IMG/VR virus record: IMGVR_UViG_3300023184_000026
Coordinates: 62,001-126,000 of that record
Length of the DNA stretch: 64,000 nt
Direction: 5' to 3' (one strand)
Part shown: positions 18,246-52,313 of the stretch, in pieces
Layout of the letters: the number at the start of each line of letters is the position of its first letter
Position numbering within the stretch: position 1 is the stretch's first letter
Translations under genes and position numbers: made by a program
Notes under the pieces: generated by a model
Databases searched by the model: none
Told to the model about the DNA's origin: nothing
Seen by the model: only the letters and a program-made list of their open reading frames with translations

Positions 18246-19433
18246 ATGAACAAAATTGTTACATTATTTTTGATGTTCTTTCTATGGAACAATGTTTATG
18301 GCGTTGTGGGTAAATTGACCGAGGTGACTGGTCCTACACAAGTTAGTAGGGCCAGTACCAAATTGGATGGTAAGATTGATGTGGGTATAGAAATAGATGA
18401 TACCATCGAAACTTTAAAATCGCGTGCTGGTATAACATTTGAAGATGGTACCAGAGTACAATGCACCGAGTTTAGCAAACTGGTTATAGATACGTTTGTG
18501 TATGATCCAAGTAGTGGAAAAGGAAAGCTCGCAATGAAAGCAACAATGGGAACGGTAAGATATGCTTCTGGATTGATTGCTAAAAATAATAAAGAAGAAG
18601 TAAAAGTAAAAACTCCCACGGCATCTATATCAGTACGTGGCACGGATTTTTCAATGACAGTTGATGAATTGGGCAGAAGTTTGGTTATTCTTTTACCATC
18701 CCAGCCACAATTTGGACCTTCCGTTGTTGGTCAGATAACAGTCAGCAATGGACTTGGAACAGTTGTATTGACCAAAGCATATCAGGCTACATTTGTAGCA
18801 TCAAGTTCTGTTGTACCATCTTCTCCAGTACTTTTAAATTTTGACGACGAAAGCAAAGTGAATAATATGTTGTTGATTGATACACCGAAAAATGTCACAC
18901 AAGCTGCAAAAGAAGCAAAGAAAGCATCTGTTGGTTCAGAAAAAGAAGATGATGGTGGTGAAGATAAAAATAAAAAGATGGAAAAGAAAGAAACAAAGTC
19001 CGAGAGTAAATCTGCTGCTACATCAGTCTCACAAGTTGAAGAAATTTCAACCGAATCTGCAACCGAAGCAACAAACTTACCTATCGTCGTGGTTCAAGAA
19101 AACATTGTCACAAAGCTTGATATAACTGCTATAAGTCCAAGCACCAATATTGCTGTTATGGATGCAATTGCAGAAAAACAATCTGTGCAACCAACATCAA
19201 TATCAATTATACCAATAGCACCAATTATATCTATACCAACTTCCACAGTAAATAATGGCTTTACAACGAACGGAACTCATGCTATATTGTATATAACCAA
19301 TGGAAATAATGTGGTTTGGTATACTCTAAAGGCTGATGCCAATGCTATATTCAATATAACTCAAAACACTGAATCAAAGGAATATCCATTGAATTTTGGT
19401 TCCAAACTTAAAGTTAATATAATTCAAAAATGA
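18246..19433 (+). CDS. FecR-domain protein
   Basis: Signal peptide; ITFEDGT, GTVRYASG, KTPTASISVRGTDF. Confidence 0.85.
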   Translation: MNKIVTLFLMFFLWNNVYGVVGKLTEVTGPTQVSRASTKLDGKIDVGIEIDDTIETLKSRAGITFEDGTRVQCTEFSKLVIDTFVYDPSSGKGKLAMKATMGTVRYASGLIAKNNKEEVKVKTPTASISVRGTDFSMTVDELGRSLVILLPSQPQFGPSVVGQITVSNGLGTVVLTKAYQATFVASSSVVPSSPVLLNFDDESKVNNMLLIDTPKNVTQAAKEAKKASVGSEKEDDGGEDKNKKMEKKETKSESKSAATSVSQVEEISTESATEATNLPIVVVQENIVTKLDITAISPSTNIAVMDAIAEKQSVQPTSISIIPIAPIISIPTSTVNNGFTTNGTHAILYITNGNNVVWYTLKADANAIFNITQNTESKEYPLNFGSKLKVNIIQK

Positions 19434-21205
19434 AATCTCATATTATTAAACTATTTGGCGTCGGTTTGCTGATATTAACCGCACTTGTTGTGCTACGCAT
19501 ACAAGATTCATATCCAATAGAAGTAATGCGGCTCAAGGGATTGGACTATTATCAACGCACGCAAGACAAAGTAAAAAGTGAAAATATCATTATTGTTGAA
19601 ATCGACGAAAAAAGTTTAGAAGAAAAAGGACAATGGCCGTGGCCAAGAAATGAACTGGCAGATGGTATAAAGAAGGCGTTTGAAAATGAAGCAGCCACTG
19701 TAGTATTGCCAATTATATTTGCAGAAAAAGATAGAATGGGTGGAGACGCAGTATTTGTGGAAATACTGGGAAAATCGCCTGTAATAACCGCACAATCTGC
19801 GGCGGTAAAGGGCAAAGGCGTGCCAGTACCAAGAGGTATGGCGACGATTGGCGGCAGTGCAGATGGATGGTTATATGATTATCCAAATGCAATCGGACCG
19901 ATAAAAGAAATAGGTGAATCGTCTGCTGGTGTGGGAATGTTATTGACGGCACCTGAACTTGATGGCGTGGTACGTCGCTTGCCGTTGGTTGTACAAGTAA
20001 AAAAAGAAACATATCCAACTTTACCTTTGGAAGTGTTGAGAGTGTTTGGAAATGAACCGAGCTATCAAGCAAAAATCAATGAAGCGGGCGTGCAAGCCAT
20101 AAGAGTAAAAGGCTCGGCCCCAATAAATACAGATGCTAGTGGTAGAGTATGGATAAACTTTAAATACAAGTTTGATAATATTTCATATACAGATAAAGAT
20201 TGGAGCAAAGTAAAGGGCAAGATTGTGGTTATAGCATTAACTGCTGAAGGATTAACAAACACAGTGGCAACTCCCGTAGGAACAGCATATGGACACGAAG
20301 TTAGTATGCAGACACTACAAATGTTGGTTGATGGAAATAGACTGGAACGCAAAGCGGAGTTTGATTTGTATGAGTTGGCAGTTGGAACATTGCTTGGATT
20401 GATTCTTGTAACATCCGCCGCATATCTTGGCTATGTTTATAATGGAATATTGGTAAAAGTGTCTGTGTCTGGGTGTATGTTTTTTGGATTTTATTTGTTC
20501 AAAAAGCATGGCTATTTGATTGATTATACTTGGCCGATTGTGGCAGCATTTTTACCGTGGGTTGGTGCAATATTTATGAGATTTGTGATGGAGTTCAAAT
20601 TGAAGATGCAAATCAAGAAGCAGTTTGGAACATATCTTTCTCCAGCACTGGTTGAAAAACTACAAAAAAATCCGGGCTTGCTCAAACTTGGTGGCGAATC
20701 CAAAGAACTAACTATATTATTTTCCGATATAAGAGGATATACTGCGTTGTCTGAGCATTTTGGGAAAGATGTGCAGGGGCTAACATCTCTCATTAACCGT
20801 TATATGGATGTTATGTTGCCTATAGTAATGAAAAATGAAGGCACTGTTGGAAAACTTATAGGGGACGCTGTAATGGCGTGGTGGTCGGCACCTATTCATG
20901 TAAAAGACCAAGCAACACTTGCAATAAAAGCCGCGCAGGAAATGAATATCGCATTGGTAAAACTCAACGAAGAATCAAAAGCACAAGGAATCCCAACTCT
21001 ATCAATCGGAATCGGAATAAATACAGGAGAAGTTGTTGTGGGAAATATGGGGTCAACGGAGCGATTTAGTTATGATATACTTGGTGACGCAGTGAATCTA
21101 GCGTCTCGCATAGAGGGTCAAACTAAAGAATATGGCGTGTTGATTATTTTGGGAGAAAATACTGTAAAAAAATACAAAAAAGAACAAGAAAATATGAAAA
21201 AATGA
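19430..21205 (+). CDS. CHASE2 + class III adenylate/guanylate cyclase, N-terminal part
   Basis: GQWPWPR, DGVVRR (CHASE2); TM helices; LFSDIRGYT, KLIGDAVM, GINTG, GDAVNLASRIEG. Confidence 0.92.
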   Translation: MKSHIIKLFGVGLLILTALVVLRIQDSYPIEVMRLKGLDYYQRTQDKVKSENIIIVEIDEKSLEEKGQWPWPRNELADGIKKAFENEAATVVLPIIFAEKDRMGGDAVFVEILGKSPVITAQSAAVKGKGVPVPRGMATIGGSADGWLYDYPNAIGPIKEIGESSAGVGMLLTAPELDGVVRRLPLVVQVKKETYPTLPLEVLRVFGNEPSYQAKINEAGVQAIRVKGSAPINTDASGRVWINFKYKFDNISYTDKDWSKVKGKIVVIALTAEGLTNTVATPVGTAYGHEVSMQTLQMLVDGNRLERKAEFDLYELAVGTLLGLILVTSAAYLGYVYNGILVKVSVSGCMFFGFYLFKKHGYLIDYTWPIVAAFLPWVGAIFMRFVMEFKLKMQIKKQFGTYLSPALVEKLQKNPGLLKLGGESKELTILFSDIRGYTALSEHFGKDVQGLTSLINRYMDVMLPIVMKNEGTVGKLIGDAVMAWWSAPIHVKDQATLAIKAAQEMNIALVKLNEESKAQGIPTLSIGIGINTGEVVVGNMGSTERFSYDILGDAVNLASRIEGQTKEYGVLIILGENTVKKYKKEQENMKK

Positions 21206-23821: not shown

Positions 23822-23897
23822 GCGGTAGTATCTCAGTTGGTAGAGAACGAGTTTTCCAAACTTGATGTCGCAGGTTCGATCCCTGTCTGCCGCTCCA
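23822..23897 (+). tRNA. tRNA-Gly(TCC)
   Basis: Cloverleaf, loop TTTCCAA, encoded CCA. Confidence 0.93.
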
Positions 23898-25791: not shown

Positions 25792-25870
25792 GGAACTAAA
25801 GCCACAGTGGACGGGCAGCGGTCTTTTAAACCGTTAATTCGTGTGGGTTCAACTCCCACTGGTTCCACCA
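25792..25870 (+). tRNA. tRNA-Lys(TTT)
   Basis: Loop CTTTTAA, CCA. Confidence 0.88.
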
Positions 25871-29163: not shown

Positions 29164-29464
29164 TTTATTTCAATATAGTATAAAGAATATACAATAATTT
29201 ATTAACATAATAATCGCAATGATGTGTATATATTTAAAGATATGTCAAAGAAAAAAACATCTAAGAAAATTAAACGAGTATCAATGAAAGAAATTGTTGA
29301 TGCATTTTATTCAGGAATTTCGCCAACTAAAATAGGTAAAATGGCAAAACAACTTGTAAAACAACAAGATGCCAGAAATTATTGATGTTAGTTTTTATAA
29401 CAACAAAAACAAAGTTTTAGAAGATAGTTATGTTGTGTATATACAACAACCAAAATAAAATCAT

Positions 29465-30535
29465 ATGAGCAAAATCACTATTCAAAATCTAGCCGAAAGA
29501 TTGTCGGCAGTTGAAACAAAATTAGCCACGCTTTCTGGCCTACAAGCCAGCGGCGTTGATGCATCAAGCATCCAAGAACTGGATATTCGTTTGTCCATCG
29601 TTGAACGTACCGTAGATGAACTGATATCAAAACCTGCCGCCGACGCAGTTGCTGCATTGGTGGCTGCATCGGCAGACGAAGCACCAACAGCTGTAGCAAG
29701 TGTTGTGGCATTGAGCCCATCAGCCACAGTTCCAGACGCCGCTGCAATTGTATCTGAAGTTATAGCAGCACAAGCTGCTGTTGACGCGCCAGAATCGCAA
29801 GAAGTTAATGATGTTGTTGTCGCTGCAATTACTGCAATTCTCACCGCTCCCGCTGATGTTGTAACAGACACAGAAGCTCTGATTGAAGCCATCACCGAAG
29901 CTGTTGCCGAAGTTGCAACAATTGATGATGCAACAGTAGCACAAGCTGCTGCTGACGCAGTTGCTCAAATCATTGAAACCGCAACAGGTGAAGCACCAAC
30001 AGCAGATGTGATTGAACAAATCACAGATGCTGTAGCATCTTGCCCAGTTGAAGCCGCTGTATCCGAAGTTATTACATCCGAAGCAGCACCAGATGCCGTG
30101 GTGGATACGCTCATTGAAAATATTGTTGCTGACAGCCCAAGTGCTGATGTATCAGCCGCCGCCGAAATCGTGGGTTTGGTCGTTGAATCCGTTGTCACCG
30201 CCGATGCTGAAACACAACCAGACGTTGTTGCCGCAGTTGCCGCAGCCGTCGCCGCAGTTGTTAATGCTGAACCAGAAGTGGTACAAGATGCAGAAGCCAT
30301 CACAGAAGCAATCACAGCAGCCGTTGCTGAATTATCAGCACCAGAATCAGAGGATGTGCAAGCTGACGTAGCAGATGCAGTTGCTCAAATTATTGCTACT
30401 GCAACCAACGTAGAAGAAGTCACAGATGCAGTTCAAATTCAAATTGAAGAAGCTGTTGCTGCTGACCCAGAACTAGAAGTCATCAATAGCCGTTTGACGG
30501 AAGTTGAAGCGAAAGTTGGTCTGCTGGGAAAATAG
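29465..30535 (+). CDS. Acidic Ala/Val-rich repeat protein (predicted -1 frameshift extension to 30609)
   Basis: 356 aa, coiled-coil-like ends, ~130-aa internal duplication, no F/W/Y/H. Confidence 0.85.
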   Translation: MSKITIQNLAERLSAVETKLATLSGLQASGVDASSIQELDIRLSIVERTVDELISKPAADAVAALVAASADEAPTAVASVVALSPSATVPDAAAIVSEVIAAQAAVDAPESQEVNDVVVAAITAILTAPADVVTDTEALIEAITEAVAEVATIDDATVAQAAADAVAQIIETATGEAPTADVIEQITDAVASCPVEAAVSEVITSEAAPDAVVDTLIENIVADSPSADVSAAAEIVGLVVESVVTADAETQPDVVAAVAAAVAAVVNAEPEVVQDAEAITEAITAAVAELSAPESEDVQADVADAVAQIIATATNVEEVTDAVQIQIEEAVAADPELEVINSRLTEVEAKVGLLGK

Positions 30536-30588
30536 GTTCCAGCGTAGGACACGTGACAGAGAATATAATGTCCACTGTCAAACGCTGG
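30526..30588 (+). promoter_or_regulatory. Predicted -1 programmed ribosomal frameshift signal
   Basis: In-frame G GGA AAA, 6-nt spacer, stems CCAGCGT/ACGCTGG, GGACA/TGTCC, TGACAG/CTGTCA. Confidence 0.7.
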
Positions 30589-30619
30589 TTTAAAAACTGG
30601 TCAGTGTAATCAAAACTCA

Positions 30620-30645
30620 AAGGCTCCAGAAATGGAGCCTTTTTT
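30620..30645 (+). terminator. Intrinsic terminator
   Basis: AAAGGCTCCA-GAAA-TGGAGCCTTTTTT. Confidence 0.85.
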
Positions 30646-31678: not shown

Positions 31679-33652
31679 ATGAAATATAATAACACACAAA
31701 ATAACTCGCTGCTTGTGAAGCTCTTTGCTTCTATGATGCTGTTTGTGGTCGCTGTGACCAGTGTATTTGCCATTCCCGGCATTACATCCACAAACCTACA
31801 AACAACTGCGGGTGTAACAGTTACAGATGCAGGTACTACTCTTAGTATCGTCGCCCCAAACAAGTCTGTGCTTACATGGCAGAACTTTGGAAGTGGCACG
31901 GATACTATTGCTATTGGAGACGCACTAAACTATACACTTCCTTCCAATAATGCATCTGTATTAAACATTGTTGCTGGTGGAGCATCCTCAACCATCAACG
32001 GTACACTTTCATCTAACGGCAATGTATATGTCCTCAATCCAAACGGCATCTTGGTCGGTGGCAGTGCTCGAATTGATGTCAATCGTTTGGGCTTGAGCAC
32101 ATCCGACAATCCATCATTTGCTAGTTTTTATTTCCAGCAAAATGGATTTCTTCCGTCTCAAGACGGGTTGGCTCCTGTCGCTGGTAATACAACCATCAAT
32201 AATGGTTCAATCATTGCAGTAAGCGAAAACATTACTCTTGTTTCCAAGAATATCACAATCAACGGTGTATTGTCTCAAGGAAATCTTGTGCTCAATGCTG
32301 ATGGTAATGTTACTGTGGGTTCTGCTGGTATGGCTTATATCGCTGGCAATTTGACTATCAACAATCCAACAGGAACAACTACAATTGGTTCTGCTGGCAA
32401 CAACACAATTATCACCAATAACCTAGTGGTCAATGGAAATTCTACAAGCGCGTTTTCTTCGGTTGCCACTGGTACAATACAAGCCAAGACGTTAAATGTA
32501 ACAGCTGGAACAATTCTGGCCGATCGTATCAGCACAAACAGCACAACTGTCAATGGCACAAATGTCACTGTTAATGTTGGTTCTGGTGCTGGCACGCCTT
32601 CTGTTACCGCAGTTGGCAATGGCACAGTACAAATATCCGCACCTGCGTCTCTTACTGTTAATGTCAGCAACTCTGGTGCTGGTGCAACCACCGTATCTGC
32701 TGGTGGTAATTTGACACTGGGTAAGGTACAAGTAGAAGGTTTGGCTGGTGCTTCATTTACTGGTGCATCTGTGACTGACACTTCGTCCAGAATATTTGTT
32801 TATGGCGGTGCTGCGTTCACTGCAACTGCTGGGAATGTTACTATCGACAAAGGACAACACAGTTTTGGTCCAGTTAGCGTATCTGCTACTGGCGAAGCCT
32901 TGATTGTTGAAGACGCAGCCACACAGTTGAACGTTGTCAACACACCAAAGTTGACATTGCGTTCTGTTGATTATATTTTTCAAACTCCAACAACTGGTGT
33001 AGTTAATAGTGCATTGGTTTCTGTTGTGGGTTCTGGAAATATAACACTTGGTGCAGTCACAAACTCCGCTGGAAATTACACAATCACCGGAAACGATGTT
33101 GTGTTTGCCAACAACGGTGCATTGTCTATATCCACGACCGCAACTGGCAACGCTTCTGTTATATCAACGGGCGCAGTGACTCTCGGCTCAATAGCCACGG
33201 GTGGCACACTAACAGTTACTTCTGCTGGAGCAATCACTCAAGCAGTTGATACCAAAGTCAGTTCGTTTGGATCTGTTCGTTTTGTTGGAACTGGATTGAC
33301 ACTATCAAATGCTGGCAACGGCTTTGGTGGCATCACAGTTGATGTTGGTACTGCCGGTACTGCCACACTCACAGAAGAAACAACTCTAAACCTCGTTTCT
33401 CTTCGCGCTGCGAATGCAACATTGAAAAGTACATTCGATGTTATTACAACTGGTGCATTGCCGGTAGTCGCTGATACATTCAATGTTGTTGTTGGTGGGG
33501 ATTTTGTTCCTGCTGCAAACTTCCGCGCCGTCAATGGTATTACAGTATTGTCTGGTGGAAATGTTGACTTGAGCAATTTGAGTTTGATCACAAACTTGAA
33601 TAACAAGAGCCCAAGCATCATTGCCAAAGGATACAAGGCTCCACAGCCATAA
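31679..33652 (+). CDS. Filamentous-haemagglutinin-like (TPS domain) secreted protein
   Basis: Signal peptide; VLTWQNF, STINGTLSSNGNVYVLNPNGIL; T/G/N/V-rich beta-helical repeats. Confidence 0.85.
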   Translation: MKYNNTQNNSLLVKLFASMMLFVVAVTSVFAIPGITSTNLQTTAGVTVTDAGTTLSIVAPNKSVLTWQNFGSGTDTIAIGDALNYTLPSNNASVLNIVAGGASSTINGTLSSNGNVYVLNPNGILVGGSARIDVNRLGLSTSDNPSFASFYFQQNGFLPSQDGLAPVAGNTTINNGSIIAVSENITLVSKNITINGVLSQGNLVLNADGNVTVGSAGMAYIAGNLTINNPTGTTTIGSAGNNTIITNNLVVNGNSTSAFSSVATGTIQAKTLNVTAGTILADRISTNSTTVNGTNVTVNVGSGAGTPSVTAVGNGTVQISAPASLTVNVSNSGAGATTVSAGGNLTLGKVQVEGLAGASFTGASVTDTSSRIFVYGGAAFTATAGNVTIDKGQHSFGPVSVSATGEALIVEDAATQLNVVNTPKLTLRSVDYIFQTPTTGVVNSALVSVVGSGNITLGAVTNSAGNYTITGNDVVFANNGALSISTTATGNASVISTGAVTLGSIATGGTLTVTSAGAITQAVDTKVSSFGSVRFVGTGLTLSNAGNGFGGITVDVGTAGTATLTEETTLNLVSLRAANATLKSTFDVITTGALPVVADTFNVVVGGDFVPAANFRAVNGITVLSGGNVDLSNLSLITNLNNKSPSIIAKGYKAPQP

Positions 33653-34131: not shown

Positions 34132-34208
34132 CCTCTTATAGCTCAATTGGTTAGAGCGGGTGCTTTATAGGCGCAGGGTTGTGGGTTCAAATCCTACTAG
34201 GAGGACCA
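34132..34208 (+). tRNA. tRNA-Ile(TAT)
   Basis: Loop TTTATAG, A73, CCA. Confidence 0.85.
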
Positions 34209-34380: not shown

Positions 34381-34456
34381 GCCGCCGAAGTTTATATGGG
34401 TGAACAATTCATTATTAATGAATAAGAAGTTGGTCCGATTCCAACCGGTGGCTCCA
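34381..34456 (+). tRNA. tRNA with ATT anticodon (nominal Asn), Thr-like acceptor
   Basis: ATTCA-TTATTAA-TGAAT; acceptor GCCGCCG/CGGTGGC, U73, CCA. Confidence 0.7.
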
Positions 34457-41406: not shown

Positions 41407-42897
41407 ATGAAACAATCAAGAAGAAGCTTTCTAGGCTTAGGAGCAATGGGATTACTTGGATTGAATATGCAAGGGGCTGAAAAAAAGCCTCTTGAATTTT
41501 GCAATCCAAATGACGTGCCACAATTTGTGTTTGGCAATGAACCAATGAGAACTCGCAAGAGTTTTTATGATCTAACCGATGAAGAACTACAGACATTATG
41601 CAAGGCTGTAGATTATATGCGTAACAAGCTTCCACGTGAAGCGCCAACAAGTTGGGAGACATATACTCGCATACACTACAAACACTGCACTGCGTTTGAT
41701 GCTGACCATCCACAAGTTCATTGGGGTGATCATTTTCTTCCTTGGCACCGTGGTTATTTATTTTTCCTCGAACGCTTGTTGGGAAATTCTTTGAATCAAC
41801 TGGGTCTTGATGGTAACAAGTTTGCTTTTCCATATTGGGATTGGATCAACCACAAAGAAATGCCAAATACAAAATTCCGTGAGTTGAAGGGGCTAGGGAG
41901 TCCATTGTTTGGTTATGACCTAATACAACAAAATATGGTGGCTGGCGACAATCTTGGTTTTGATAATCTTGCGTTATACGATGGAAACCGTGGTCCTACA
42001 CTTGAAAAGAGTAAAATAGACCCCGCCAACGAAACGCAGCAAGATTCTAAAGATCACGTCGCCGAATGCCTTGGTTATATGAGCAAAGAGTATGTTGACT
42101 TGATGCTGACTACTCCTTGGGAGCAATTTGGAGGAAAGCCCGGTATTGATCGTAAGACTGGTCAAGGATTGGTTGAAGCCGGTGCCCACAATGACGGTCA
42201 CGACTGGGTTGGAACAAGATATGGATGCAACAGAACAATGGGTACGCTGCGCTATGCCGCAGACGATCCTATTTTCTTTATGCACCACTGCAACTTGGAT
42301 AGAATATTCTCGTTGTATAAGAATCCAATCCCAGATATCAATGGACCATGGGGCCAACAAAGATATGTGTTCCCTGATTTGAATGGTTCGCCCGTAAGCG
42401 TATCGGTCAAAGATATTATGCTATGGACTCAAACGGTATCATATCAAGCACCGCAAACAAGCAAAGCGAAGCTAGGTGCATCTAAAGCATTAAAGAATGC
42501 TGCGTCTGTTACGATTCCTGTAAACAAATCGACGGTATCTAAAGCAGGGTTGAGTGTTTCAATTGAGCCTTCTGTAAGCCTGAAAAACTTGATCAATAAA
42601 GGTCTTGAGTCTGGTACATCAATTCTTGAAATTGAAACCGGACCAATATCTCATGCTGGCCGCGCCACGATCAAAGTTTATATTGGTAAAAAATATATAG
42701 GAAGAATCAAGATAATGGACGGAGATCCAAGCACAACAAATCCAGACGCTTCGCATACATTTGTGATGACACTTGGACAATTGGGTAAGATTTCCGAGGC
42801 AATTCCAGTTGCGTATAAATTCGATGTGAATTTTTATGCGTATGGCATAAGCCAAGATGTGCTAATAAGAAACTTAAAGTTCAGTGTAATGAAATAA
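41407..42897 (+). CDS. Tat-exported tyrosinase/polyphenol oxidase
   Basis: SRRSFLG twin-arginine; CuA H..HC...QVHW..HFLPWHRGYL; CuB HNDGH...DPIFFMHHCNLDR. Confidence 0.9.
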   Translation: MKQSRRSFLGLGAMGLLGLNMQGAEKKPLEFCNPNDVPQFVFGNEPMRTRKSFYDLTDEELQTLCKAVDYMRNKLPREAPTSWETYTRIHYKHCTAFDADHPQVHWGDHFLPWHRGYLFFLERLLGNSLNQLGLDGNKFAFPYWDWINHKEMPNTKFRELKGLGSPLFGYDLIQQNMVAGDNLGFDNLALYDGNRGPTLEKSKIDPANETQQDSKDHVAECLGYMSKEYVDLMLTTPWEQFGGKPGIDRKTGQGLVEAGAHNDGHDWVGTRYGCNRTMGTLRYAADDPIFFMHHCNLDRIFSLYKNPIPDINGPWGQQRYVFPDLNGSPVSVSVKDIMLWTQTVSYQAPQTSKAKLGASKALKNAASVTIPVNKSTVSKAGLSVSIEPSVSLKNLINKGLESGTSILEIETGPISHAGRATIKVYIGKKYIGRIKIMDGDPSTTNPDASHTFVMTLGQLGKISEAIPVAYKFDVNFYAYGISQDVLIRNLKFSVMK

Positions 42898-45794: not shown

Positions 45795-46185
45795 GGGCGT
45801 GTTATGGATTCTACTTTATAATGTAGGTTTAAGCCGCAAGCACAGAGTCTAATGTCTCTGTATAATACCCGTTGGAAAACATAAATGCTAAGAGAAATCT
45901 TGCAAAGGTGTCTTTTCTTTCTGTTCGCAAGAACAGCGGAGCCGAGACACTTGTCGCAGCCTAATAAAATAGGCTGTCCGTTGTCCTTGTGACACAGATA
46001 ACAAGTCAACAACGTTCATCATCTGGCCGTTTGTGCAAGATAGAAGATGGTAGCACAAATCAAATACTAAACTTCAACTTCAATGTGGTGCTCTACCAAA
46101 CATTGATGTATTATAAGAGATAAGCTTGTATATGTTTAGATGTATGTTATATAGCACGCGGATTCGACTTCCGCCACGTCCACCA
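45795..46185 (+). ncRNA. ssrA: tmRNA
   Basis: 5' GGGCGTG..GGATTCTAC; G3:U70 acceptor, T arm and ACCA end; tag ORF 45887-45964 (A)AKRNLAKVSFLSVRKNSGAETLVAA*. Confidence 0.92.
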
Positions 46186-51810: not shown

Positions 51811-52012
51811 TGAAGGACCGCGCATGGTAGAATTTGGCAAGTTGGAACTTGGAAACAAGTTTTTTCTTGGAAACCCAGATATACTAACTGAAAACGCTGC
51901 ATACACAAAAATAGTCAGCCAAAAGAACAATGAAGGTAAATGGTCAAATGCAAAGAACGCATTTGGTCTTGTTACATTTGTACAATACGACAAAAGGGTA
52001 TGGAAGAAATAA
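51797..52012 (+). CDS. Hypothetical protein
   Basis: ATG ORF in operon. Confidence 0.55.
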   Translation: MKTNNEGPRMVEFGKLELGNKFFLGNPDILTENAAYTKIVSQKNNEGKWSNAKNAFGLVTFVQYDKRVWKK

Positions 52013-52013
52013 A

Positions 52014-52313
52014 ATGAAAAAGTTTGTGTTGAAGCGTGAATATATTTCTGATGTGACAGACACCAAATACATGACATTGAATATGTATGATGGTTCTACC
52101 ATATCTGGAATGTCACATGGTACAATTGATCACCCAGAGTTCACAAAGTTGCGTGATATGTTGGAACAACAAGACTATATTAGCACAGAAAGAAGTTGGG
52201 TCAATGGCGACAGAGTGCTCAAACCATTTAGCTTAAATGCATTTAAGTTCAAAATTGGGGAACAATTTCCTTGTGCTTCTGCATTGAATGTTCGCTTATC
52301 TATAAAAAAATGA
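52014..52313 (+). CDS. Hypothetical protein
   Basis: ATG ORF in operon. Confidence 0.6.
   Translation: MKKFVLKREYISDVTDTKYMTLNMYDGSTISGMSHGTIDHPEFTKLRDMLEQQDYISTERSWVNGDRVLKPFSLNAFKFKIGEQFPCASALNVRLSIKK

What the first reader, a model, noticed from the sequence alone, without database searches (positions are those of the whole stretch)
29465..30645. -1 programmed frameshift with complex pseudoknot adds an amphipathic tail to an acidic repeat protein
Seen: the ORF ends ...CTG GGA AAA TAG, an in-frame X XXY YYZ heptamer (GGGAAAA, 30526-32). Six nt later is a structure with outer stem CCAGCGT/ACGCTGG enclosing crossed stems GGACA/TGTCC and TGACAG/CTGTCA. The -1 frame gives IGSSVGHVTENIMSTVKRWFKNWSV* (stop 30607-09), and the terminator comes only after this stop. 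The 356-aa protein has no F/W/Y/H, while the extension is basic and aromatic. Established: similar heptamers drive the lambda G/GT frameshift. Inference: two isoforms, soluble and membrane-anchored, of a scaffold-like protein, outside the usual tail-chaperone context.
Basis: partly seen in the sequence, partly recalled or inferred. Interest (0 to 1): 0.8.

Follow-up and report, generated by a model that had tools for sequence, protein, structure and literature searches.

The report
Conserved frameshift adds amphipathic tail
A family of acidic helical proteins found so far only in lake-water giant-phage contigs almost certainly uses a programmed -1 ribosomal frameshift at its last two codons to give some copies a short basic, amphipathic C-terminal helix (probably a membrane or docking anchor), a recoding event that no gene caller has annotated.

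Summary
On its own the window is not significant: a heptamer abutting a stop is expected about 0.5 times among its 83 ORFs. Comparison settles it.

- **Slip site.** Of 47 distinct homologous 3' ends from phage contigs, 42 keep G_GGA_AAR (or G_GGG_AAG, G_GGA_AAC) in register, directly followed by the stop codon.
- **Tail ORF.** In all 38 distinct short forms the -1 frame has no stop in the next 13 codons. It has no start codon of its own. It encodes a conserved peptide, GK(V/I)Ixx(V/I)(K/R)xW(F/I)xx(L/I)F.
- **Co-loss.** Loci that lost the heptamer also lost the tail ORF.
- **Hairpin.** A hairpin 4-9 nt downstream recurs with different stem sequences, and it is more stable than synonymous recodings allow.

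The "complex pseudoknot" is not supported. The window's structure is the family hairpin with about 36 nt inserted into its loop. It folds as a nested bipartite hairpin (-21.4 kcal/mol), and the orthologues have no crossing stems.

Membrane anchoring by the tail is plausible but untested. It fits the tail's MinD-like amphipathic character and the frequent neighbouring LpxH-like phosphoesterase and glycosyltransferase genes. This is a new, well-supported case of a known mechanism.

The parts
29465..30535 (+). Zero-frame ORF, 356 aa. It is an acidic, Ala/Val/Glu-rich, all-helical protein with heptad-like N- and C-terminal segments, and it is the long form of a family seen only in phage contigs.
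   Evidence: ORF list. Composition. AF2 model all-helical, pLDDT 77. Homologues P0001-P0056 and 57 viral loci. Metatranscriptome contigs cover 29457-30606.
30526..30532 (+). Slippery heptamer G_GGA_AAA in zero-frame register (Leu-Gly-Lys: CTG GGA AAA).
   Evidence: Kept in 42 of 47 distinct homologous 3' ends. Its synonymous sites are constrained: the expected frequency of NNG GGA AAR given the peptide LGK is 0.07, and 34 of 44 have it.
30533..30535 (+). Zero-frame stop TAG directly abutting the heptamer. It is probably part of the signal, as an A-site stop after the slippery codons.
   Evidence: The stop abuts the heptamer in all 42 loci that keep it, as TAA, TAG or TGA. The stimulatory role is inferred from the 'shifty stop' literature cited in PMC5009743.
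30532..30609 (+). -1 frame extension: 25 codons (IGSSVGHVTENIMSTVKRWFKNWSV) plus TAA at 30607-09. The C-terminal part (NIMSTVKRWFKNW) is a cationic amphipathic helix.
   Evidence: Homologous tails are conserved at the amino-acid level, with mean pairwise BLOSUM62 of 2.12 against about 0 in the other frames, and 0 stops in 38 of 38. Hydrophobic moment 0.73, reached by 0.1% of shuffles. No start codon in the -1 frame upstream.
30539..30588 (+). 3' stimulatory structure: a bipartite nested hairpin. The outer stem pairs 30539-45 with 30582-88. The inner interrupted helix pairs 30548-58 with 30569-79, around a 10-nt apical loop.
   Evidence: MFE -21.4 kcal/mol. More stable than all 300 synonymous recodings, -22.1 against a mean of -11.8. 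The outer stem is homologous to the short-form hairpin. Orthologues L068 and L064 are nested too.
30619..30642 (+). Rho-independent terminator, placed after the -1 frame stop.
   Evidence: RNA contig coverage falls off between 30606 and 30625.

Best explanation
The gene makes two proteins from one mRNA.

Most ribosomes stop at TAG 30533 and release the 356-aa acidic helical protein. A fraction slip back one base on G_GGA_AAA (30526-32). Two things help the slip: the stop codon that enters the A site straight after the slippery codons, and a stable hairpin that starts 6 nt downstream. These ribosomes read 25 more codons in the -1 frame and add a basic, Trp/Phe-containing amphipathic helix, giving a 381-aa isoform.

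Shown by comparison: the slip site, the abutting stop, the open -1 frame, the tail peptide and a downstream hairpin are conserved or co-lost across the family.

Inferred: the tail acts as a weak in-plane membrane anchor, like the C-terminal membrane-targeting helix of MinD, or as a docking peptide. Frameshift efficiency would then set how many subunits of a presumably oligomeric, coiled-coil-ended protein carry an anchor. In most relatives the gene sits next to an LpxH/PlcP-like phosphoesterase and a glycosyltransferase, which points to the cell envelope.
For: Heptamer and abutting stop:
- Present in 42 of 47 distinct 3' ends.
- Synonymous positions are fixed well beyond local codon usage: 0.07 expected, 34 of 44 observed, plus 7 with G_GGG_AAG.

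Tail ORF:
- 0 stops in the -1 frame over 13 codons in 38 of 38 distinct short forms, against 55-67 stops in the other frames. Mean pairwise BLOSUM62 is 2.12 against 0.09 and -0.10.
- The alignment is gapless, with conserved T at second codon positions of the hydrophobic residues.
- No ATG, GTG or TTG lies in the -1 frame between the upstream stop and the slip site in any locus that keeps the heptamer.
- The three LGK loci without a heptamer (L040, L060, L061) are exactly those whose tail ORF is broken or diverged.

Hairpin:
- Native RNA is more stable than at least 95% of synonymous recodings in 23 of 42.
- There are two registers with different stem sequences. Pairing is 62-69%, against 26-57% when the partners are slid.

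Other:
- RNA contigs from 4 lake metatranscriptomes span the gene. One (X16) runs through the slip site and tail to 30606 without indels.
- The tails are cationic (+2 to +6) and amphipathic.
- G_GGA_AAG is highly shift-prone in E. coli and G_GGA_AAC is used by archaeal viruses (PMC5009743).
- MinD's C-terminal amphipathic helix binds membrane weakly and needs two or more copies (PMC6803595).
- Synteny with an LpxH-like phosphoesterase and GT2 or GT4 genes holds in 37 of 58 loci examined.
Against: - No direct detection of the trans-frame protein, and the efficiency is unknown.
- Seven distinct sequences carry G_GGG_AAG. There the A-site Lys tRNA cannot re-pair, so only the G_GGG tetramer remains.
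- About six lineages have little or no hairpin (L022, L027, L038, L041, L052, L023).
- Five lineages lost the cassette, including P0003/P0004 through a 1-nt deletion, so the tail is dispensable in some phages.
- In the window the gene lies in a tRNA array, not beside the phosphoesterase and glycosyltransferase genes.
- In L064 its neighbours look like fibre or virion proteins, which favours a virion-docking reading.
- Membrane binding is inferred from peptide chemistry alone.
Confidence: 0.8

Rival explanations
1. There is no recoding. The region after the stop is only a structured 3' UTR (a stability or termination element) and the open -1 frame is incidental.
For: The hairpin is strong and is followed by a terminator. 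Related phages do carry a structured 3'-UTR element that is not specific to this gene. Within the window alone, the heptamer at the stop and a 25-codon open frame are not significant.
Against: This reading cannot explain several results:
- Amino-acid-level conservation in one frame only, and zero stops in 38 of 38.
- Preserved hydrophobic periodicity while the nucleotides diverge.
- Fixation of synonymous sites in the heptamer.
- Co-loss of the heptamer and the tail ORF.
Confidence: 0.05
2. The tail is made as a separate micro-peptide by termination-reinitiation at a near-cognate codon (AUA, AUU or GUA) overlapping the stop. It is not fused to the protein.
For: The stop and the first tail codons overlap (..AAG UAA UA..). 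Codons 3-4 of the -1 frame are GUA/AUA then AUA/AUU, and AUU is a rare bacterial start (my knowledge). Short amphipathic peptides can act alone.
Against: No canonical start codon was found in any locus that keeps the heptamer. No Shine-Dalgarno-like sequence was seen by eye, and this was not scanned systematically. Reinitiation would not need the G_GGA_AAR heptamer, whose synonymous sites are nevertheless fixed. GUA and AUA are forced by the overlapping TAA, so they are not evidence for a start.
Confidence: 0.05
3. Frameshifting occurs as proposed, but the tail is a protein-protein docking peptide rather than a membrane anchor. One example would be attaching a fraction of subunits to the capsid, a tail fibre or an enzyme, as in the frameshift-extended capsid proteins of T7/T3, A2 and A118.
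For: Long-form loci have fibre-like neighbours: a 1779-aa Peptidase_S74 protein and PKD proteins in L064, and beta-helix and TPS-domain proteins in the window. RNA contigs cover this gene far more than its flanks, as for abundant virion proteins. Frameshift-extended structural proteins are a known phage theme (PMC5009743).
Against: The tail has the chemistry of lipid-binding helices: short, cationic, with a Trp/Phe face and no acidic patch. In 37 of 58 loci examined the neighbours are an LpxH-like phosphoesterase and glycosyltransferases, often with DUF4337, PBP5-like and PstS genes, rather than virion genes. No structural-protein family or fold match was found.
Confidence: 0.25
4. The two frames are joined by something other than ribosomal slippage: an assembly or sequencing indel, transcriptional slippage on the A run, or a reassigned or suppressed TAG.
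For: Homopolymer runs are error-prone. The phage carries 30 tRNAs.
Against: - The same frame arrangement is found in more than 45 independently assembled contigs and in RNA contigs without indels.
- The A run is only 2-4 nt, which is short for polymerase slippage (my knowledge).
- There is no suppressor tRNA.
- Homologues use TAA, TAG and TGA.
- The zero frame hits another TAG 4 codons on.
Confidence: 0.02

Closest known systems
Phage lambda G/GT and the conserved tail-assembly-chaperone frameshift of dsDNA phages
   Same: Same class of signal: -1 slip on G_GGA_AAG-type heptamers near the 3' end of a phage gene. It gives a fixed ratio of a short product and a C-terminally extended one that share the N-terminal body (PMC5009743).
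   Different: - Not a tail chaperone. There is no tail or tape-measure synteny and no match in Pfam, PHROGs or NCBIfam.
- The extension is 13-25 aa, not a domain of about 100 aa or more.
- The zero-frame stop directly abuts the heptamer.
- A conserved downstream hairpin is present.
Frameshift-extended phage structural proteins (T7/T3 gene 10A/10B, Lactobacillus phage A2, Listeria phages A118/A500/PSA)
   Same: Recoding near the end of an abundant phage protein's ORF gives a minor isoform with a C-terminal add-on. In PSA a stop codon or a pseudoknot serves as stimulator (PMC5009743).
   Different: Those extensions are Ig-like or other folded domains displayed on virions. Here the add-on is a short cationic amphipathic helix on an acidic helical protein that has no detectable capsid or tail homology.
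[quoted passage not shown]
   Same: The architecture is a slippery heptamer ending in a Lys codon, an immediately following zero-frame stop and a 3' stem-loop. The longer product comes from the shift (PMC5009743).
   Different: It is a cellular replication gene with a large extension (the tau domains), an A_AAA_AAG heptamer, and in E. coli an upstream Shine-Dalgarno stimulator. None was seen by eye here.
C-terminal membrane-targeting amphipathic helices of MinD, FtsA and FlhG
   Same: About 10-15 residues at the extreme C-terminus with a basic face and a hydrophobic, aromatic face. Single-copy affinity is weak, so the number of copies per oligomer controls binding (PMC6803595). The tail consensus ..(V/I)(K/R)xW(F/I)xx(L/I)F.. 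fits this chemistry.
   Different: Those helices are encoded in frame and are present on every subunit, and binding is switched by nucleotide-dependent dimerisation. Here the presence of the helix would be set at translation. There is no sequence homology, and membrane binding was not tested.

Membership tests
Canonical -1 programmed ribosomal frameshift cassette | X_XXY_YYZ heptamer in the zero-frame register | tested here: met
   G_GGA_AAA at 30526-32. 35 of 47 distinct homologous 3' ends have G_GGA_AAR/C, and 7 have G_GGG_AAG, where only the tetramer remains.
Canonical -1 programmed ribosomal frameshift cassette | The -1 ORF is open past the site, under protein-coding selection, and lacks its own initiation codon | tested here: met
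   0 stops in 38 of 38. BLOSUM62 is 2.12 against about 0 in the other frames. No start codons in any locus that keeps the heptamer.
Canonical -1 programmed ribosomal frameshift cassette | A stimulatory RNA structure about 5-9 nt 3' of the heptamer | tested here: met
   In the window, a 6-nt spacer and a hairpin of -21.4 kcal/mol. In the family, spacers are mostly 4-9 nt, and 23 of 42 are more stable than at least 95% of synonymous recodings. About 6 lineages lack a clear hairpin.
Canonical -1 programmed ribosomal frameshift cassette | The trans-frame protein is actually produced | not testable with these tools
   Only RNA contigs were available. There are no proteomic or reporter data.
H-type pseudoknot frameshift stimulator | Two crossing helices, with loops long enough to span the grooves, conserved or covarying among relatives | tested here: not met
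   Crossing complementarity is present only in the window lineage. The connecting loops are 2 nt and 1 nt, and 1-nt linkers join it to the enclosing stem. Orthologues L068 and L064 have only nested helices. The L003/L004 change CG>GA is compatible with the nested fold and strengthens it, -23.3 kcal/mol. No pseudoknot energy model was run, and the steric argument rests on general knowledge.
Phage tail assembly chaperone (G/GT-like) | The gene pair lies between the major tail protein and tape measure genes, and the T extension is a folded domain | tested here: not met
   Neighbours are tRNAs, NUDIX and beta-helix/TPS proteins in the window, or phosphoesterase and glycosyltransferase genes in relatives. 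The extension is 13-25 aa. No PHROG or Pfam chaperone hit.
MinD/FtsA-type C-terminal membrane-targeting sequence (analogy only) | A short C-terminal amphipathic helix with a cationic face and a hydrophobic, aromatic face | tested here: met
   Maximum hydrophobic moment 0.43-0.87, net charge +2 to +6, and 18 of 31 tails exceed 95% of their own shuffles.
MinD/FtsA-type C-terminal membrane-targeting sequence (analogy only) | Direct, reversible binding to lipid bilayers | not testable with these tools
   This needs localisation or liposome assays.
PlcP-Agt-type lipid-remodelling operon (for the neighbours in related loci) | A phospholipase-C-type metallophosphoesterase immediately next to a diacylglycerol glycosyltransferase | tested here: inconclusive
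   Cluster c1 is a calcineurin-like phosphoesterase. Its closest named relative is LpxH, below the family cut-offs. Cluster c3 is a GT4 with sub-threshold similarity to glycolipid synthases. The gene order resembles plcP-agt operons (PMC4796936). No direct comparison with a characterised PlcP was made.

The most novel reading that the evidence does not exclude
Frameshift efficiency acts as a translational 'valency dial'. It would set the number of weak membrane-binding helices per oligomer of an abundant acidic phage protein. That protein would recruit or organise phage-encoded envelope and lipid-remodelling enzymes (an LpxH/PlcP-like phosphoesterase and glycosyltransferases) at the host inner membrane. 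To my knowledge, and in the library searches made here, this would be the first case of a membrane-targeting sequence that is appended only by ribosomal frameshifting, in a protein family restricted to uncultured freshwater T4-superfamily jumbo phages.
Probability: 0.3. Interest if true: 0.75.

Novelty: new member of a known kind. Interest (0 to 1): 0.6.

Why it matters
- **Annotation.** This adds a clean, deeply conserved and so far unannotated -1 frameshift outside the tail-chaperone and capsid paradigms. Every gene call in the databases ends at ...LLGK.
- **Mechanism.** The family offers natural variation to study. It has one heptamer type with A/G/C at position 7 and a recurrent G_GGA to G_GGG polymorphism. 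The stop always abuts the heptamer. Hairpins occur in two registers, with an expanded version in the window. Several lineages have lost the whole cassette.
- **Biology.** If the tail is a membrane anchor, translation itself would decide what fraction of a phage protein is membrane-bound. That may link to phage-driven envelope or lipid remodelling in lake bacteria.
- **Method.** A single-sequence observation that was statistically weak became decisive once about 50 homologous loci were compared.

Tried and rejected
- **Rfam** at the site gave only tRNAs and sub-threshold noise.
- **Family and fold searches for the protein.** Pfam, PHROGs and NCBIfam gave nothing. PDB sequence search, PDB fold search and BFVD fold search gave nothing significant. 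The ESM Atlas returned only viral hypothetical clusters.
- **Cellular or cultured relatives.** None were found in 185,579 bacterial and archaeal genomes, though that scan is pattern-based. None were found in deposited phage genomes by blastn or tblastn, with the low-complexity filter on.
- **Full-family alignment A2** was too divergent for locus search. I used the short-form alignment A3 instead.
- **MAFFT alignment of long and short 3' regions (A4)** was misaligned and discarded.
- **TAG reassignment or suppressor** was rejected.
- **The window's only other ORF with a heptamer abutting its stop** (A_AAA_AAA at 52304-10, ORF 51930-52313) was examined and rejected as recoding. The next gene starts at ATG 52310 in an ATGA overlap and has its own PHROG family.
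- **Read-through of the tail stop** in relatives gives no conserved frame, judged by eye.
- **The pseudoknot** was rejected in favour of a nested hairpin.
- **Structure prediction of the fused isoform** was not attempted. The tools do not accept a protein read through a stop, and the tail alone is under 30 aa.
- **The inserted domain of about 100 aa** in P0011/P0012 has no family match.
Full report
**What is in the window**

ORF 29465-30535 (356 aa) ends CTG GGA AAA TAG, so GGGAAAA (30526-32) is an in-register X_XXY_YYZ heptamer followed directly by the stop. In the -1 frame, GGG AAA is followed by 25 codons (IGSSVGHVTENIMSTVKRWFKNWSV) and TAA at 30607-09. A rho-independent terminator lies at 30619-42.

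The protein has no F, W, Y or H, has 65 acidic against 9 basic residues and a pI near 4. The tail has a pI near 10. Six nt after the heptamer, CCAGCGT (30539-45) pairs with ACGCTGG (30582-88) around a 36-nt insert. The region folds far better than shuffles (z = -4.66). All stated coordinates are correct.

The window comes from a 297-kb viral contig from lake water. It encodes a T4-type PolB, whose best match among cultured phages is 42% identical (Microcystis phage Mel-JY01). It also carries 30 tRNAs and a tmRNA.

**Is it more than chance?**

Not from the window alone. In-register heptamers abutting a stop are expected 0.52 times among the 83 ORFs of 100 aa or more, and two are seen. The other one (52304-10) is an ordinary ATGA start/stop overlap with an independent gene. 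The decision therefore had to come from relatives.

**The family**

A protein search found 19 relatives and a profile search found 39 representatives among 1.84 billion. There are long forms (about 356 aa) and short forms (about 214 aa). Nearly all end in (L/S)LGK at the stop, and none has the tail fused in frame.

The family appears only in viral or metagenomic contigs:
- no hit in a pattern-based scan of 185,579 bacterial and archaeal genomes;
- none in deposited phage genomes;
- ESM Atlas clusters that are 100% viral.

I fetched 57 short-form loci and 4 additional long-form loci.

**Evidence for recoding**

Among 47 distinct heptamer-plus-70-nt sequences:
- 22 have GGGAAAG, 11 GGGAAAA, 2 GGGAAAC and 7 GGGGAAG;
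- 5 lack a heptamer;
- in the 42 that keep a heptamer the stop codon always abuts it, and TAA is the commonest stop (39 of all 47).

Given the peptide Leu-Gly-Lys and local codon usage, NNG GGA AAR is expected 7% of the time. It is found in 34 of 44, plus the 7 with GGGGAAG.

In the 13 codons after GGG AAA, the -1 frame has no stop in 38 of 38 distinct short forms. The other two frames have 55 and 67 stops. For pairs with at most 80% nucleotide identity, mean pairwise BLOSUM62 per residue is 2.12 in the -1 frame, against 0.09 and -0.10.

The tails align without gaps as GK(V/I)(I/V)xx(V/I/F)(K/R/Q)x(W/F)(F/I)xx(L/I/F)(F/I). The least variable nucleotides are the second-position T's of the hydrophobic codons. 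The window's STVKRWFKNW matches the family core (SGVKRWFSKLF in L025).

No locus that keeps the heptamer has ATG, GTG or TTG in the -1 frame between the upstream stop and the slip site.

The three LGK-ending loci without a heptamer are exactly those whose tail ORF is gone, interrupted or diverged: L040, L061 and L060. In the P0003/P0004 lineage a 1-nt deletion moves GGGAAAA out of register, and a terminator replaces the tail. Slip site and tail are therefore kept and lost together.

Contigs from four lake metatranscriptomes cover the gene from about 29457. The longest (X16) reaches 30606, through the slip site and the tail, without indels. The flanks are barely covered. Contigs cannot exclude rare slippage products.

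**The RNA structure**

Most relatives have a hairpin starting 4-9 nt after the heptamer. The stems fall into two main registers and have unrelated sequences, for example:
- CTGGCGT/ACGCTGG
- AAAATCCAA/TTGGATTTT
- GCTTCCGAA/TTTGGAAGC
- AACGTCCGA/TCGGACGTT
- CCAACGT/ACGTTGG

Pairing reaches 69% and 62% of cells, against 26-57% when the partners are slid. Covariation scores exceed the shuffles, with 2 of 500 and 0 of 500 shuffles reaching the observed value.

Recoding the tail with synonymous codons shows the structure is selected beyond the peptide. The native RNA beats at least 95% of recodings in 23 of 42 sequences. For the window it is -22.1 against a mean of -11.8 kcal/mol, with 0 of 300 recodings as stable. 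About six lineages lack a convincing hairpin.

The window's outer stem is the family's CCAGCG/CGCTGG hairpin with about 36 nt inserted into its loop. The insert is translated as GHVTENIMST.

**Pseudoknot or not**

The insert contains tandem GACA..GACA and UGUC..UGUC repeats, so two registers exist:
- a nested one (30548-58 with 30569-79).

The nested fold is the MFE at -21.4 kcal/mol. Each crossed stem alone is worth only -4.5 or -5.4 kcal/mol. The crossed model would need loops of 2 nt and 1 nt and 1-nt linkers to the enclosing stem. From general knowledge of H-type pseudoknot geometry this is very strained, and I know of no precedent.

The orthologues argue the same way:
- L068 (69% identical protein) has an insert of the same size with one nested inner helix (AUGUAA/UUACAU);
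- L064 has a simple 12-bp hairpin;
- neither can form crossing stems.

The only variation in close relatives (CG>GA at 30552-53 in L003/L004) lies between the crossed stems, but it also adds a pair to the nested fold, -23.3 kcal/mol. I conclude that the structure is an expanded bipartite hairpin. A pseudoknot is not excluded by computation but is unsupported.

**Mechanism**

Established knowledge covers three points:
- G_GGA_AAG is highly shift-prone in E. coli, and G_GGA_AAC is used by archaeal viruses (PMC5009743).
- Motifs can be heptamers or Z_ZZN tetramers (PMC4066793 abstract).
- Stem-loops 3' of the site stimulate -1 shifts, and some dnaX genes have the zero-frame stop directly after the shift site (PMC5009743).

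My inferences are these. tRNA-Gly and tRNA-Lys slip in tandem. Alternatively, Lys-tRNA slips from AAG/AAA to AAA while the stop sits in the A site. Both routes give ...G-K-(V/I)-I.... The G_GGG_AAG variants recur as polymorphisms between near-identical pairs (L018/L019 and L039/L043). They would rely on a P-site G_GGG slip and give G-E-V-I, perhaps at lower efficiency.

**What the two isoforms may do**

The body of the protein is predicted to be all-helical (pLDDT 77), with no PDB or BFVD fold match. The tails are cationic (+2 to +6) and amphipathic. The window's maximum hydrophobic moment is 0.73, reached by 0.1% of shuffles. This is the chemistry of the C-terminal membrane-targeting helix of MinD, which binds weakly and needs two or more copies (PMC6803595).

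In 37 of 58 loci examined the gene is adjacent to a calcineurin-like phosphoesterase whose nearest named relative is LpxH, together with a GT2 or GT4 glycosyltransferase. DUF4337, PBP5-like carboxypeptidase and PstS genes are often nearby. The order resembles bacterial plcP-glycosyltransferase lipid-remodelling operons (PMC4796936), but I did not test membership in that family.

I therefore favour a membrane anchor whose copy number per oligomer is set by frameshift efficiency (confidence about 0.5). A docking peptide for a virion or enzyme partner is the main alternative. It is favoured by the fibre-like neighbours of the long forms. The window itself has no phosphoesterase or GT2 neighbour.

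**Verdict**

The -1 frameshift and the amphipathic tail are strongly supported by comparative evidence. The pseudoknot is not supported. Membrane anchoring is plausible but untested. This is a new, unannotated member of the known class of phage -1 frameshift cassettes, in a new protein family and with an unusually small functional add-on.

Noticed in passing
L018-L061 (for example L021:3678-3732, L037:3681-3736); also L052:6014-6067, L039:6453-6507 (-) and L045:6494-6548 (-): A conserved RNA element of about 50 nt lies just upstream of terminators in related phages. It has two adjacent hairpins with 4 covarying pairs. By eye from the alignment, a loop-loop pair also covaries perfectly (A-U, C-G or G-C; alignment column 22 with 37/38). 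In about 16 loci the tail ORF runs into the element, so its last codons (..KSGTR*) and its stop codon lie inside it. It also follows unrelated genes. It is not in Rfam and is absent from the window.
   Followed up: partly
window 23822-23897 and 25792-25870: The phage encodes tRNA-Gly(UCC) and tRNA-Lys(UUU), the decoders of the two slippery codons GGA and AAA. With 30 tRNAs on board this may be coincidence.
   Followed up: no
window 29444-29465: Metatranscriptome contigs from four runs start at 29444-29463, which is 2-21 nt upstream of the ATG, and no Shine-Dalgarno sequence is evident. This may be a short-leader mRNA or a processing site next to the tRNA array. Contig ends are imprecise.
   Followed up: no
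window 34132-34208 and 34381-34456: ARAGORN calls tRNA-Ile with anticodon TAT and tRNA-Asn with anticodon ATT, which are unusual anticodons. The array also has duplicate Asn(GTT), Pro(TGG), Leu(CAA) and Met genes.
   Followed up: no
window 18246-21205, 41407-42897 and 31679-33652: The phage carries unusual cargo: a FecR-like protein with a CHASE2-adenylate/guanylate cyclase, a tyrosinase-domain protein, and a protein with a TPS (two-partner secretion) domain and DUF5649 repeats just downstream of the finding.
   Followed up: partly
L069:4030-4130 (P0003; also P0004): This long-form lineage lost the cassette. A 1-nt deletion about 25 nt upstream puts GGGAAAA in another frame, so the protein ends ..MLNHWENN. 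The tail is replaced by a strong terminator hairpin followed by what looks like a tRNA gene (by eye). Two independent assemblies agree.
   Followed up: partly
L061:3640-3700 (524-kb contig): The heptamer has degraded to AGGAAAA, and a TGA interrupts an otherwise recognisable tail (..ASI*CWFSTFFKSGTR). This is either recent decay or TGA read as sense in this very large phage.
   Followed up: no
L018:3750-4023, L021:4416-4753 and window 45795-46185: Related short-form phages carry tmRNA of the betaproteobacterial or permuted type close to the gene, which hints at betaproteobacterial hosts. The window's tmRNA is of the standard one-piece type.
   Followed up: partly
P0011, P0012; L057, L060: Some family members carry a non-repetitive, aromatic-containing insert of about 100 aa in the middle of the helical repeats. 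It matches no Pfam family.
   Followed up: partly
window 52304-52313: A_AAA_AAA abuts the stop of ORF 51930-52313. This is explained by an ATGA overlap with the next gene (PHROG 16527) and is not recoding.
   Followed up: yes
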